Made by a program: the position numbers and the translations under genes. Of a stretch of 64,000 nucleotides of DNA, positions 38,589-45,300 are shown piece by piece. Source of the DNA: Lytechinus pictus (taxonomy: Eukaryota); the NCBI RefSeq assembly GCF_037042905.1, contig NC_087260.1, positions 25,482,001 to 25,546,000 of the forward strand, written 5' to 3'. The notes under the pieces were generated by a model. The model searched no databases and was not told the DNA's origin. It saw only the letters and a list, made by a program, of their open reading frames with translations. How positions within the stretch are numbered: the stretch's first letter is position 1; each line of letters starts with the position of its first letter.

Positions 38589-39193
38589 GGGAGTGTTTCA
38601 TAAAGCGGTTCGCAAGTAACAAGTTACTTTACGGAAGACTGGTGATCCTTTCTTTTGGTAAATGACTTCTATTGGCGTTGATTTCAAGTTCCTCATGTTC
38701 CTAACAAAGGATCACCAGTCGTTCATAAAGTCACCTGTAACCTATGAAGAGCTTTATGAAACACCAACCTGATGGAAGAGAGGTTGGACGAAGAAACAGC
38801 ATTCCTCTTTGATCCTTGTAAGTTTCCCAGAGGAGTGTTTCACATACAGTTTTGTCAGTTATTTTCACCGACTTACTTGTTGTAAGCTACTGAAATCCTT
38901 TCATCTGATTGGCTCAAAGCAAACAGTAAAAATCACTAACAAGGTAGTTCATGAAACTACAACTGGAGACGATTTCATGAAATAAATAATGAATTCACTG
39001 ACATATGTTTCAGGCTACTGAAATCCTTGCATTTGATTGGCTCATGAAACTACAACTGGAGACAATTTCATGAAATAAATAATGATTTCACTGATCTATG
39101 TTTCAGGCTACTGAAATCCTTGCATCTGATTGGCAGAGAGCAAATTATTAAGCAAAAATCACTAACAAGATATTTCATGAAACACTTCCCTGG
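38589..39193. mobile_element. Cluster of CWG-target MITEs in the proximal FARP 3'UTR: one hairpin element plus three head-to-tail related units
   Basis: gagtgtttcataaag...ctttatgaaacacc (38589-38771); repeated gctactgaaatccttgcatctgattggc cores and tcatgaaactacaactggagac junctions (38828-39193). Confidence 0.75.
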
Positions 39194-39352: not shown

Positions 39353-42300
39353 CTGTGAAAAGAAAGAATGAAGAGAAATTTAAAAAAAATACTCCTGTGA
39401 GCTTTGAAAAGTGACAGTTTTAACCTTATCAAAGTGTAGATGGAGATTACAAAACAGTTAGGCAAACATGCTTCTATGAATTTATTTGCTCAATACTTTT
39501 GTAAATAAGTTAAGCCAATACAATCCATTACTTTATGTGTCATGCCTATATTAGAACATGATACATCAGAATGAATTTACAAGGTAAAAAGGAATTAAAT
39601 TAAGTATCAAAGGAATGACCTAGCTTATGATAGCTCATGGCACTGGACAATAATAGTCCAGTGCTGTTATTCTTAGATATGTGTAGACTCAAAACTATTC
39701 ATTTCCATTTTTCCATGAACTGTCCTACAAGATTTGGGACAACATGCTATTCATTATAGTATGGCCTTATCCATCGCTGGTATTATGCAACAATGTAAAG
39801 AAGATGTTTCACAAAATAAAGTGACTTTAAATCAAGCTTAAGTGCCAATGTGCAAATGAAATCTAACACATGGCCAGTTCCATAAAGTATCTTCGTCTAA
39901 CCTCCAATGCTAGGGATGTTCTTGAAATCCTTTGAACCCTAAATTTTATTTGTTTCTAGTTCAAATGAAAAGATGTAATGCTCTCAGATTACCATGGATG
40001 GAGCAGGTCATGAAGTAGAGCAAGAATAGAGAAAGATGGGGTTGGACATCCAAAAAGGTAAATTATTTTATGGCACTGCCCAGATAATCTGCATGACGAT
40101 GAAGTCGCACAGATATAACCTACATGAATATAGTCATGCTTAATATTTTGTGAAACACGCTCCCCCCCGCCATGTATGTTGACATTGAAAAGAAATTGTT
40201 ATGAGATGCTTACCTGCTGAATGTGTACTCGCTCTCTGCCCTGAAGAAATAGACGTGGGTCTTGAATTGTAGCTTGAAGACATAGTCTTTACGAATATCA
40301 TCCTCTTCAGCTGGTATCATCACAGAGTAGCCCAGTAGGGGGAGGCTCGCTAAGGGGTAATCGTCCTAAAGGGGAAAGGAATGAATATTCATTGGTATTA
40401 TCAAAGAGTAACCCAGAAGGGGGGGAGGATGGTTTAGGGGTAATAGTCATAAGGGGGAAAGGAATGAATATTCATTGGTATCTACACAGAGTAACCCAGA
40501 AGGGGGAGGCTCGCTAAGGGGTAATCGTCCTAAAGGGGAAAGGAATGAATATCATTAACTAAAGGGTAATCATTAAGCATTATCTGACTTGACAAGATAT
40601 TGCTATAAAGGCTGTGTCACATCCTTCCGTGCAAGCATTGCAGGGAACTATTTTGATACCCACAGGTCGCCCGCATTGACAGTATCTCACACGTATCAAG
40701 CACGCAGATGCCCACAGAAGCGCAGGCAAGAATGGTTTTGAACATTCTCTAAACTTTGTTGCGGGTGAGTTGCGGGGCAATCACCTGCAAGGCTTGCACG
40801 GAAGGATGTGACAGGGCCTTAAGCAACTGAAATACTGTAATTTGATTTGCTGAGTAACAAAAAGAGTAGCAAAAATGTAATAGACCAATAACAAAATGTA
40901 TGAAGCATGACCCATAGAAGAAATGACCAGACTAACCTGATGGCTTTTATAGAAGAAGAGACAGAAGTTTGTAAAAACCACCCACAGCTTCTGCCATCCA
41001 TTGCTGTTCTTGAATTTACGCAATAAAAATCCACTCAACTGATTCTGTCAAAGAGATAAAGAAGAAATGAAGAAATCCAATAATTACATATCAGTTGTGT
41101 TGTGTTTAAACACCACTAAAACAATCAGATGCATGTCCTAAATGTGTATATATTTTTTAAACCTTACATACACTTATTCTAGGGCCGAGTTTACGCGACC
41201 TCATAAGTGAGAATCACAAACACAAACATAAATCATGGCAAAAGCAATTCTCCAGAAATGTGTTTCAAAATGTTTTAAATCATGATTTTAGATTTAAAAA
41301 GTGGCACATAGACGAACCCTACGATGGATAAAAACTTAGCTCTTGTAATCCCAAATGAGACTGGTTCAACAGTCAAACTTAACTAAAATTCAGAGTTCAG
41401 AACTATAATTCTATGATTTGCACTCTTTCTTCTTTGAATATTTCAATTATTTTTCTACCTCCAACAGACAAATTTAATATAGCAATTTTGAATTTGACAC
41501 CATCCTTCACAAAAAAAATTGATGTGAAAGTACCTCTACGGCCTGGACATGATCCGCCATGCTAACGCTAGTATTACGATGCCAAAAAACATGAATGGTT
41601 GTATTAAAATATCAATGTGAACGTACCTCTACGGCCTGTACATGGTCCGCCATGCTTACACTGGTATTACGATGACAACAAACATGAACTGTTGTATTAA
41701 AATATCAATGTGAACGTACCTCTACGGCCTGCACATGGTCCGCCATGCTAACACTGGTATTACGATGCCAACAAACATGAACTGTTGTATTAAAATATCA
41801 ATGTGAACGTACCTCTACGGCCTGTACATGGTCCGCCATGCTAACACTGGTATTACGATGCCAACAAACATGAACTCTTGTATCAAAATATCAATGTGAA
41901 CGTACCTCTACGGCCTGTACATGGTCCGCCATACTAACACTAGTATTACGATGCCAACAAACATGAACCGTTGTATTAGCCCGATGGTGTGATTGACGAT
42001 CTATAGACTTGGACGGTGACGACACGTCGTCTTCTGCTTCCTCAAATGCTGAATCTTGGTCCGGCGAACCTATAAGAAAATCAAAAACGTCATGTTTCAG
42101 ATGGGCAGTGCTCATTTCATGCTGTTCGATTTAATGATTTAAAATCATTGTATTTCTACTGAGTATTTATGAAAAAAAAATTAACATAAACATGAAATTC
42201 AATTCCTAAAATAACATGCATATTGAACATTTTACTGCATGCACTTGGCAGTCTATTTAAATACATACACAAAATCAAGGAAGTTCAATATCTTTTATAT

Positions 42301-45300
42301 ATAATATCTTATGTTTCAGGAAAAGATATCATAAATTATGCTCAAAGGTAATTGTGCTTTTAATATCATGAATTTGTGTTTTAGAATGCATATGTAGCAA
42401 CTGAAGTAAACAAGTATAACTGTTTTGAATTTACATGTTTGTTTTCTTGTCCTACTTCTTCATCTCTTTCTCAGTGCTAGAACATATAAAATGGAATAAG
42501 CATTTACTATCATTATCATGCATAAACATTAACATGTGAGCTTCTGGGTTAAACATCGCAATTTCTCTGATAATAAACTAAGATTTGAAGTCTAACTTAC
42601 TTAATGTATCTGTAGGTTGGTCATCTTGGCACATACTCATTGCTAGCCTTATATCCTGTAGAAAAATGAAACAAAAAAGGAAATCTTGATAAATACATAT
42701 TTGGCAATTTTATAAAACAATCAACCTTTCTATTTGTCTAACCACATTTTTCTCCTTTTTTCAAATCAGTTCATTACCTGCCAAGGTCATTTTAATCTCA
42801 TAACATTAACAAATTTAAAATGATATAAAAAACAGAGACAAACTATTTCATGAAGGTCCCCAATATCAAAGATACGATGTACCGTACATGTTTTATGTTG
42901 AAATTAAATAAAGTGACCATATTAATGATATACAATCCTGAGTAAATAATAAATAAAACCTTTAGAAATCAAACTACCAAATGGTATACACAGGAGTTAT
43001 TTGCAAGAAAAAGAGTAATGTTTATGTTGATAAGAACCTGCACTCTCTTTAAGTGTACCACATCCCATAGGGCAAAGGTGAGCATGAATTGAACTAATAT
43101 CACATTCGTTATATACAAATATGTTATATGAAAAAAAAATCCACTTTTATTTATTTGTATAGCAAGATCAAACAGCAGTTTAATCTGAAAAGGCCAATTT
43201 ACAAACAATTAACTAAGGTAGCCAGTTATCGCTTTCTCCACATATTAAACTCCAAACAAAGCTTGAAGTCTGATGAAAAAAAATAAAGCCACCAGCATAA
43301 AAAGTTGGAAGGAGATGTGATTTAACTTAGCTTTTGCCTCAATGCCAAAGATTACAGCAGATTTAATTAAAGCATTTTTTGTTGGGGTATTTTGTTTGTG
43401 TGGCATTATGGAAGTGCACAAGGACGCTATAATCATAAGGTGATATGCGCTATACAAGAACTCTTTATTCTTCTTCTTCATATTATCATTATTCCAACTA
43501 AACATATCATCTGGCATAGGACAGACTTTGATATCTATTTTTAAAATCATTTTTTTTTTCTGTTTTGTATTATGTTGAATCTTACCTCCATCCATCTAAG
43601 CTTTTCTTCCGGTGTGCTTGCTGCTATGACAACTGTCTTGTTACCTCCGTATAATGTGAAGCAGTTTGCAACGGAGCGGTCAAGCTCACTATCTTCAAGC
43701 TGAAATTAAAAGGTAAAGGATTTTCTTGACAAAATGCACATGACATAAATTGTCCAGAAGGTAGCTTTTTCATCAAAGATAAAAAACTCATTCTTTTTTA
43801 TTATGTTCTTTACACAATGTAAAAATAAACAAAAAATGTTCTTTTCAGAATATAATTTAAAAAAATGTACTTAGGGTTAGGGTTTTAAAATATGTTCCTT
43901 ACACAACAACCATGAAACATTACGCGAATCCTGTGTTTAAAAAATACCCCACCAGCTTATAACACAGGAACTCCATTGCCTTGCGTGTTGTGTCAATGGG
44001 AGCTCAGGTGGGGTATTTGAAACCCCAATTTCAGATTTTGGGAGAGCTTCATTTCTCTCGTTTAAACTGGGGTGGGGTTCATCTGACTGCTGATAATGTC
44101 TTGCGTGTTAGTCAATGGGAGCTCAAGTGGGGTATTGACACCCCACTTTCAGTTTTTGGGAAAGTTTCATTTCTCTCGTTTAAACTGGGGTGGGGTCGAT
44201 TTAGTGACTGCAGCTGCTGATAAGAGCTGATAAAACACTGTGCATGCCACCACATCAGGCTGATGAACGGCATGGAGTGGGATTGCAGCTGCCCTTGTTA
44301 CGTAATAGTATAAACAAACTCTTCAGAGCTTCCTGGCTGACAGTAATCTTGAAAGAATATATTTGTATTCTATTTGTTTTAGGACATTAGCATGTCTAAA
44401 AACGATTCAAAATTTAGATGGAGATCGAACTGAAATTTTGAACGATGCAAAATGACCCACAATTGCCGAAATAACAATAGGTTTTAAAAAATCACCCCCA
44501 GTTAACTCCCTCTCTCTCTCCCCCTCTTGCTCTCTCTCTCTCTCTCTGCCAGGCCTTATGAAGGTCACTTCTCCTTGGGGGGAAGGTGGATTAGCTGGGA
44601 GAGTGTGTGGTTGTTTACTTAAGGATAACCATTCTTTGTTGATATTGGGATGGGGGGGGGGGGGGGGGCGAGTGAAAGTAGCTTGGAATTTGAAATTGGG
44701 GTGTCAGAGGAGATCCATTTTTAAACACAAAGTTCCGTAATGATAAATTGAAAGTATAGTAAGTGGATTTTACAAAGCTTTTGTCCTTTATCTATAAAGT
44801 TCCCCACTTTATTAATATAATTTCTTCATTCGTCTATCTCCGTACCTGTGATGCAACAATTCTAACATTTTTTAATGTTCTGCCAATGGATTATATATTT
44901 TATTTACTCATTTTATATCTAATAATGGTATACTCGCACTGTTAGTCTCTGGAGTTTTGTGGAATATTTAGATGAAACCTAATTGAATTGGATAAATAAA
45001 TTCATCCATTATCTATTTGGTCTATTTTTTATAATCATTGGAATTTTTCAACCAGCAATAACATAAGGAAATGGAACGATTTGATAAGTCAAATAATTTT
45101 TTCCTCTGCTTTGAGTGTAATCCAGGATATGTTTTTGACTCACCACAACTCCTTTGAGAGGGATTTGGCCATGAACTTTGAACTGGTTGGTAGGCGTGAC
45201 CCCTTTACTGGTATACACCAAGACGTCTGAGAAGAGAAAGAACATCCTCTGCTGGTATCCCTTACGGGATAGCTTGTGAAGACAACCCTCTCGGATGAAA

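What the first reader, a model, noticed from the sequence alone, without database searches (positions are those of the whole stretch)
41521..41978. Five-copy array of a FARP exon end plus splice donor, with synonymous-biased divergence
Seen: a 93-bp unit made of the last 24 codons of the exon (NTTVHVCWHRNTSVSMADHVQAVE) plus the first 21 intron nt is repeated 5 times. This gives four extra GAG/gtacgt or GAG/gtactt donors. The period is a multiple of 3, but an in-frame TGA (GTA CGT TCA CAT TGA) follows the first donor, so any distal donor would create a premature stop. By hand count, about 9 synonymous third-position variants (ACG/ACA/ACC, ACT/ACC, AGT/AGC twice, GTT/GTA, GAC/GAT, GTA/GTG/GTC) compare with about 5 non-synonymous ones. 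The middle copy differs from the exon at 4 sites, all silent. Neutral intronic copies should accumulate mostly non-synonymous changes. Inference: the copies are repeatedly re-seeded from or exchanged with the selected exon by gene conversion or unequal crossing-over, acting as an archive of exon alleles, and/or they serve as decoy donors coupling splicing to NMD.
Basis: partly seen in the sequence, partly recalled or inferred. Interest (0 to 1): 0.8.

Follow-up and report, generated by a model that had tools for sequence, protein, structure and literature searches.

The report
Intron minisatellite repeating a splice donor
The end of one coding exon of a FARP (Rho-GEF) gene and its splice-donor signal are copied five times in tandem at the start of the next intron. 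This is a known kind of boundary-spanning minisatellite: the cell uses the first, genuine donor, and the only unusual feature is a modest excess of silent differences among the copies.

Summary
Tandem Repeats Finder gives a 93-bp unit, 4.9 copies, 94% match at 41522-41978, on the minus strand. Each unit is the last 24 codons of a FARP linker exon plus 21 intron bases. There are four extra donors, and an in-frame TGA follows donor 1.

An assembled mRNA contig from the same species joins 41906 directly to 41044, so donor 1 is used and copies 2-5 are spliced out. A DNA contig of a sister species skips exactly 372 = 4x93 bases, which indicates one copy there. Four more distant relatives also have one copy. 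The array is therefore young and lineage-specific.

The class is known: human F7 IVS7, LMNB2, PDGFA, CBS and IFI6 (PMC1557585). This scan already noted it in three other genes of this genome (VPS13, TMEM209, R3HDM).

The silent excess is real as a count: 9 synonymous, 5 non-synonymous. P is 0.0004-0.006 against pure neutrality and 0.002-0.013 against a tree model with only the exon lineage constrained. It rests on 14 events, and no site pattern requires recombination.

I read it as a by-product of constraint on the real exon plus exchange or allele capture in a very heterozygous species. A decoy-donor/NMD role has no support. RNA depth was too low (exon depth 1-3) to exclude rare isoforms. Copy number in this species could not be checked with reads.

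The parts
41906..42069 (-). FARP linker exon (54 codons plus 2 nt, phase 1 start, phase 0 end). Its last 72 nt are the coding part of repeat copy 1.
   Evidence: PDB FARP1/FARP2 match ending at AVE. The mRNA contig piece 41906-42069 has 0 mismatches. tblastn hits from FARP2 proteins and a Ridgeia homologue.
41513..41977 (-). Five-copy 93-bp array. The copies start at 41977, 41884, 41791, 41698 and 41605. Copy 1 spans the exon-intron boundary and copies 2-5 are intronic.
   Evidence: TRF period 93, 4.9 copies, 94%. Unit-by-unit alignment.
41900..41908 (-). Authentic donor GAG|gtacgt, cut between 41906 and 41905. This is the one used in mRNA.
   Evidence: The mRNA contig joins 41906 to 41044. 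Sequence.
41891..41893 (-). In-frame TGA 13-15 nt into the intron. It would terminate any transcript spliced at a distal donor.
   Evidence: Direct reading.
41528..41815 (-). Four reiterated pseudo-donors, cut after 41813, 41720, 41627 (GAG|gtacgt) and 41534 (GAG|gtactt, G+5 lost).
   Evidence: No RNA read or contig lies on them.
41045..41905 (-). The intron removed in the mRNA (861 nt). It contains copies 2-5 whole.
   Evidence: Pieces of the X1 contig.
40937..41044 (-). Next exon (NQLSGFLLRKFKNSNGWQKLW..., start of PH2). Its acceptor is at 41044.
42601..42655 (-). Preceding small exon (DIRLAMSMCQDDQPTDTL plus A), ending in phase 1.
   Evidence: ORF and splice-site search. The same peptide lies directly before SSPDQ in relative P0152.
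40312..40556 (-). Mirror array: 83 bp x 3, made of the acceptor plus the start of the following exon. The real exon (40214-40365) is the last copy.
   Evidence: TRF, sequence. The mRNA contig enters at 40364/5.

Best explanation
This is a junction-spanning intronic minisatellite. A 93-bp segment covering the last 72 nt of a FARP exon, its donor and 21 intron nt was duplicated in tandem by slippage or unequal exchange. It expanded to five copies in this lineage only.

Because the first copy stays attached to the exon, the spliceosome uses the most upstream donor and removes copies 2-5 with the intron. The protein is unchanged and the array is tolerated, not used.

The silent-biased differences arise because much of the variation passed through the one selected copy. 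There are two routes: silent substitutions on the exon lineage itself, and capture of exon alleles or exchange with the exon during unequal recombination in a very polymorphic, large population.

Shown: the array, the exon identity, use of donor 1 in mRNA, one copy in relatives, and the count of silent versus replacement changes.

Inferred: the mechanism of origin, the exchange or allele capture, and the lack of function.
For: - Array and anatomy.
- FARP exon identity and boundary.
- mRNA contig X1 (3730 nt, same species) aligns 42069-41906 | 41044-40936 | 40364-40212 with no mismatch. Donor 1 is therefore joined to 41044.
- Runs X21, X22 and X1 have zero depth over 41591-41874.
- A sister-species DNA contig (910 nt, depth 71) crosses the locus with a joint that skips 372 = 4x93 bases, and no other contig of that run lies on the array.
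- Four more distant relatives have one copy followed by ordinary intron, and TRF on the two loci scanned (L002, L004) finds no repeat at the exon end.
- Copies 1-4 differ by 3-5 per 93. That is less than the 10% intron divergence from the sister species and of the order of sea-urchin heterozygosity, 2.9-5% (PMC9557091).
- All six reading frames of the unit are closed (own reading), and the RNA fold is unremarkable, z=-0.81.
- The class and its positional rule are described for F7, LMNB2, PDGFA, CBS and IFI6 (PMC1557585).
- The joint position implies that the sister species matches copy 5, not copy 1, at unit column 39. At least one silent change therefore lies on the exon lineage.
Against: - A tree model in which only the exon lineage is constrained still gives a mean silent fraction of 0.28-0.34 and P=0.002-0.013 for 9 of 14. 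The exon's own substitutions do not suffice, and exchange or allele capture must be added without direct proof.
- No incompatible site pair shows recombination.
- Allele capture predicts variation in the 21 intron bases, but these are identical in copies 1-4 (6/24 third positions versus 0/21, Fisher P=0.023).
- Copy number in this species is supported only by the assembly.
- RNA depth on the exons was 1-3, so rare distal-donor products are not excluded.
Confidence: 0.65

Rival explanations
1. The same tolerated minisatellite, but the silent excess is sampling noise picked out by a reader scanning very many windows. The intronic copies simply decay neutrally and no exchange is involved.
For: - There are only 14 events on 72 nt.
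- Counted by columns (7 of 12) P is 0.004-0.07, depending on the mutation model.
- The private changes of the intronic copies 2-4 are 3 replacement to 2 silent, as neutrality predicts.
- One tree explains every column.
- The middle copy of the neighbouring mirror array is plainly degenerate, with indels and a lost AG.
Against: - Nominal P is 0.002-0.013 even under the constrained-exon tree model.
- Among copies 1-4, 6 of 8 variable columns are third positions (P=0.005).
- Two unverified notes of this scan report the same lean at other loci of this genome.
Confidence: 0.2
2. Decoy donors: the reiterated donors compete with donor 1. Their use puts the TGA into the mRNA, so the array tunes FARP output through nonsense-mediated decay.
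For: - Three pseudo-donors are identical to the real one, and the fourth differs only at +5.
- An in-frame TGA follows donor 1, with at least two exon junctions downstream.
- In IFI6 and CBS the two proximal pseudo-sites are used in addition to the real one (PMC1557585).
Against: - The mRNA contig uses donor 1, and no read or contig lies on copies 2-5.
- The array is absent from the sister species and from other relatives.
- In F7 functional pseudo-sites do not compete with the upstream site, and in LMNB2 and PDGFA only the authentic donor is used.
- Coding-type conservation of the copies is irrelevant to a decoy role.
Confidence: 0.05
3. Copies 2-4 are alternative 62-nt mini-exons. An AG at unit columns 9-10 (acag|TT in copies 3 and 4, agag|TT in copy 2) gives a phase-1 acceptor. 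This is in frame with the phase-1 end of exon 42655-42601 and makes an isoform lacking SPDQ...ANTT. Selection on that isoform would keep the copies coding.
For: - The phase arithmetic works.
- Within columns 11-72 of copies 1-4 there are 4 silent changes and 1 replacement, and the 21-nt spacer is invariant.
Against: - The candidate acceptors have 10/18 pyrimidines, against 14-17/18 for the gene's real acceptors.
- No transcript evidence.
- One AG in three would be in phase by chance.
- The array is absent in relatives.
- Copy 4 carries W to C in the invariant VCWHR motif.
- The same silent lean is reported at other loci, where this coincidence cannot be general.
Confidence: 0.03
4. Assembly artefact: the true locus has fewer copies, and the five-copy form mixes haplotypes or reads.
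For: - No independent DNA reads of this species were available.
- Sea-urchin assemblies suffer from haplotype duplication (PMC9557091).
- Differences among copies are at the level of allelic differences.
Against: - The copies are in perfect 93-bp register with no indel, and each has its own variants.
- 457 bp is far below long-read length.
- Similar arrays are noted in three other genes of the genome, one with read support according to its follow-up note.
Confidence: 0.05

Closest known systems
Human F7 intron 7 VNTR (37-bp monomer, 5-9 copies)
   Same: The first monomer spans the exon-intron boundary, so the donor is reiterated in the intron and only the most upstream donor is used (PMC1557585). 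Here the mRNA contig also uses the first donor.
   Different: The F7 monomer holds only 4 exon nt. Here it holds 72 exon nt (24 codons), so coding-type divergence can be measured. F7 polymorphism and pseudo-site competence were tested experimentally, and here they were not.
Human LMNB2 (100-bp monomer, 10-15 copies) and PDGFA intron 4 (81-bp monomer, 16-18 copies) boundary minisatellites
   Same: Similar monomer size and the same junction-spanning layout, with only the authentic donor used (as cited in PMC1557585).
   Different: Fewer copies here (5).
Other junction-spanning arrays noted by this scan in the same genome (VPS13, TMEM209, R3HDM)
   Same: Exon end plus donor repeated at the start of the intron. 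The follow-up notes conclude first-donor use and neutral unequal crossing-over, and one note reports a silent lean among copies.
   Different: Those are unverified AI notes on other windows that I could not read. Copy numbers there are higher (12-37).
Tandem exon duplication giving mutually exclusive exons
   Same: Tandem copies of coding sequence with their own donors.
   Different: The copies here lack the exon's acceptor and first 92 nt, and no transcript includes them.

Membership tests
Junction-spanning intronic minisatellite (F7 IVS7 type) | Head-to-tail tandem array of a 10-100+ bp monomer | tested here: met
   Period 93, 4.9 copies, 94% match, no indels.
Junction-spanning intronic minisatellite (F7 IVS7 type) | The first monomer spans an exon-intron boundary, so the donor sequence is reiterated in the intron | tested here: met
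   Copy 1 is the last 72 nt of the FARP exon plus 21 intron nt. Copies 2-4 have identical donors and copy 5 a weakened one.
Junction-spanning intronic minisatellite (F7 IVS7 type) | The most upstream donor is the one used in mature mRNA | tested here: met
   The mRNA contig joins 41906 to 41044, and nothing is laid on copies 2-5. Minor use is not excluded at exon depth 1-3.
Junction-spanning intronic minisatellite (F7 IVS7 type) | Copy number variable among alleles (VNTR) | not testable with these tools
   No DNA run of the species was offered. Between species the count is 5 versus 1.
NMD-coupled regulatory splice element (poison site) | Use of the alternative site introduces a premature stop upstream of an exon junction | tested here: met
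   TGA at 41891-41893, with junctions at 41044 and 40365 downstream.
NMD-coupled regulatory splice element (poison site) | The unproductive isoform is detectable and is stabilised when NMD is blocked | not tested
   No reads on the copies at exon depth 1-3. No NMD-inhibited data available.
NMD-coupled regulatory splice element (poison site) | The element is conserved across related species | tested here: not met
   The sister-species contig skips 4 units. L001-L004 each have one copy.
Tandemly duplicated alternative exons | Each copy has its own usable acceptor and donor and is in frame | tested here: inconclusive
   Copies 2-4 have an in-phase AG, but with a weak pyrimidine tract, 10/18.
Tandemly duplicated alternative exons | Transcripts contain the alternative copies | tested here: not met
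   No contig or read on 41591-41874 in three RNA runs. Depth was low.

The most novel reading that the evidence does not exclude
In this very polymorphic, large-population genome, unequal exchange within junction-spanning arrays may be frequent enough that purifying selection on the one real exon reaches the intronic copies. The copies would then keep coding-like sequence (dN/dS below 1) although never translated, and would exchange silent variants with the exon. This would be a general property of such arrays at several loci of the genome (here FARP; VPS13 and a 161-bp array according to earlier notes).
Probability: 0.3. Interest if true: 0.5.

Novelty: new member of a known kind. Interest (0 to 1): 0.27.

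Why it matters
As a structure it adds one more natural example, in an invertebrate, of reiterated identical donors where the upstream one is chosen. That is useful as a natural test of positional 5' splice-site selection outside mammals. Unlike F7, the monomer carries 24 codons, so the copies record whether intronic exon copies decay neutrally. A silent excess, if confirmed across the several arrays of this genome, would measure how far selection on one copy extends through unequal exchange. It does not change what is known about FARP function.

Tried and rejected
1. Reading the array as a translated repeat: rejected. All three sense frames and all three antisense frames of the unit contain stops (read).

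2. RNA structure masking the pseudo-donors: z=-0.81, nothing.

3. A link with the other 93-bp-period array at 38949-39134: the sequences are unrelated, local score 12-13.

4. Protein P0042, with 8 matched stretches in the representative search, looked like a translated array elsewhere. It is a low-complexity repeat protein with chance similarity.

5. Attempts to obtain the sister species' letters at the variable columns, or exon alleles from other individuals, all failed:
- The short-ORF homologue search returned only distant relatives.
- The search seeded with P0020 returned only bird and reptile FARP2 and was wasted.
- A MAFFT alignment of window exon peptides to an annelid FARP misplaced the fragments, so I did not use it as a profile.
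- No echinoderm full-length FARP was among the representatives.

6. Explaining the silent excess by the exon lineage alone: simulation shows it is insufficient.

7. The DNA of the closest protein relative, P0152, could not be fetched because the file was too large.

Full report
**What is there.**
On the minus strand, TRF reports one array at 41522-41978: period 93, 4.9 copies, 94% matches, no indels. Cutting the sequence at the AAT codon gives five units in perfect register: 41885-41977, 41792-41884, 41699-41791, 41606-41698 and 41513-41605. Each unit has 72 coding-type bases and 21 bases that are intron in copy 1.

The 54-codon exon 42069-41906 matches the PH1-PH2 linker of human FARP1 (PDB 4h6y, E=1e-14) and FARP2 (4gzu, E=1e-11), and both alignments end at ...AVE, as the exon does. 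FARP proteins map ten exons of the gene in the window.

Copies 1-4 carry GAG|gtacgt and copy 5 carries GAG|gtactt. The intron after donor 1 reads through to TGA at 41891-41893.

**Which donor is used.**
I used two raw rRNA-depleted RNA runs and one RNA contig set of the window's species, plus one DNA contig set of a related species.

A 3730-nt RNA contig (X1) aligns without mismatch to 42069-41906, 41044-40936 and 40364-40212 in consecutive record positions. The mRNA therefore joins donor 1 to the acceptor at 41044 and removes copies 2-5. None of the three RNA runs puts a read or contig on 41591-41874. The raw-read depth on the exons was only 1-3 in one run and 0 in the other, so rare distal-donor products are not excluded.

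**Age and distribution.**
A 910-nt DNA contig of the related species (depth 71) crosses the locus with a single joint, 41567 to 41940. The joint skips 372 = 4x93 bases, and no other contig of that run lies on the array. A de Bruijn contig could not run through a tandem loop, so I read this as one copy there, with the caveat that contigs can collapse repeats.

Its intron differs from the window by 10.3% and the exon-containing piece by 5.6%. Four genomic ORFs from more distant relatives (78-90% identical in this exon) each show one exon end followed by ordinary intron. TRF on the two loci scanned (L002, L004) finds no repeat at the exon end.

Copies 1-4 differ from each other by 3-5 of 93, and copy 5 differs from them by 11-13. 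The array is therefore lineage-specific and largely younger than the split from the sister species.

**What kind of thing it is.**
A literature search led to Borensztajn et al. 2006 (PMC1557585). It describes minisatellites whose first monomer spans an exon-intron boundary:
- F7 intron 7 (37 bp, 5-9 copies)
- LMNB2 (100 bp)
- PDGFA (81 bp)
- CBS
- IFI6

[quoted passage not shown] In LMNB2 and PDGFA only the authentic donor is used. In IFI6 and CBS the two proximal pseudo-sites are used as well.

The present array meets the three structural and usage criteria I could test. Allelic copy-number variation could not be tested.

Earlier notes of this scan describe the same layout in VPS13, TMEM209 and R3HDM of this genome, which those notes call the painted sea urchin. 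I did not verify them. The scan has thus found this kind before on other DNA.

**The silent excess.**
Against a pure mutation null (silent fraction 0.20-0.29 for kappa 1-5 and CpG weights 1-10), 9 silent of 14 events has P=0.0004-0.006. Counted by columns, 7 of 12 has P=0.004-0.03.

I first thought the exon's own lineage, which can take only silent changes, would explain it. A simulation on the tree ((2,3,4),1,5) with only that lineage constrained gives a mean silent fraction of 0.28-0.34 and P=0.002-0.013. It explains only part.

Among copies 1-4, six of eight variable columns are third positions (P=0.005), while the 21 intron bases are invariant (6/24 versus 0/21, P=0.023). Per-site event densities are 0.61 for silent sites, 0.19 for intron and 0.09 for replacement sites. 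The oddity is as much an excess at silent sites as a deficit of replacements.

All columns are compatible with one tree, so nothing demands recombination. The private changes of the intronic copies 2-4 are 3 replacement to 2 silent, which is neutral-looking.

From the position of the joint (18 ambiguous letters, unit columns 21-38) I infer that the sister species matches copy 5, not copy 1, at column 39. It is also at least as close to copy 5 as to copy 1 over columns 39-93. At least one silent change therefore lies on the exon lineage. This is an inference from how the tool places joints, not a read-out of letters.

**Interpretation.**
The most economical reading is a tolerated by-product of tandem duplication. 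Much of the variation among copies was filtered through the selected first copy. That could happen by the exon's own silent substitutions, and by unequal exchange between haplotypes that places exon alleles in intronic positions, and the reverse.

Sea-urchin heterozygosity of 2.9-5% (PMC9557091) is of the same order as the 3-5% differences among copies 1-4. Two unverified notes report a similar silent lean at other arrays of this genome. That lowered my weight on pure chance and on locus-specific explanations.

**Alternatives examined.**
- *Decoy/NMD.* The premature stop is real, but there is no usage, no conservation, and the known positional rule argues against competition.
- *Mini-exons.* Copies 2-4 have an AG at unit columns 9-10. 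This would be in phase with the phase-1 end of the small exon 42655-42601 and would give an in-frame isoform without SPDQ...ANTT. The acceptor is weak, however (10/18 pyrimidines against 14-17/18), no transcript shows it, and copy 4 has W to C in VCWHR.
- *Translation of the array as a repeat.* Excluded by stops in all frames.
- *RNA structure.* z=-0.81.
- *Assembly artefact.* Unlikely given the exact register and the copy-specific variants, but untested by reads.

**Verdict.**
This is a new member of a known kind. The regulatory reading is unsupported, and the exchange reading is plausible but unproven.

Noticed in passing
window 40312-40556 (minus strand), exon 40214-40365: Mirror case: 83 bp x 3, made of 28 intron nt with the acceptor plus the first 55 nt of the next exon. 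The upstream copy keeps an intact acceptor (tttcccctttag|GAC) but has an in-frame TAG. The middle copy has lost its AG and has indels. The mRNA contig uses the last copy (40364/5). Sister-species contigs lie on both the first and the last copy, so this array seems older and shared. The two decoy copies share CTT and GGT where the real exon has CTA and GGC, both silent.
   Followed up: partly
window about 40600-40880: A repeated element in the intron, with very high depth in all runs of both species and many 'opposite strands' joints at 40651/40781-40790. It looks like a foldback or MITE-like inverted-repeat transposon.
   Followed up: no
window 42070-42600, versus protein P0152: In the closest protein relative (P0152, a genomic ORF) the peptides of exon 42655-42601 and exon 42069-41906 are contiguous (…DDQTADTLSSPDQDS…). 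The 531-nt intron present here is therefore absent there, which means intron gain or loss among relatives. Its DNA could not be fetched.
   Followed up: no
window 38949-39134: A second array with the same period, 93 bp x 2.0 at 94%, about 2.4 kb downstream in the same gene region. Its sequence is unrelated to the FARP unit. Whether it overlaps an exon or the 3'UTR was not determined.
   Followed up: partly
window 41906-41977 versus 41606-41884: The exon copy differs from intronic copies 2-4 at 3-4 silent sites (pS 0.20-0.27), but at none of the 21 intron bases. Copies 2-4 differ among themselves at pS 0.07-0.14. The silent sites of the real exon look unusually diverged from its own copies. This is unexplained, and the numbers are small.
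   Followed up: partly
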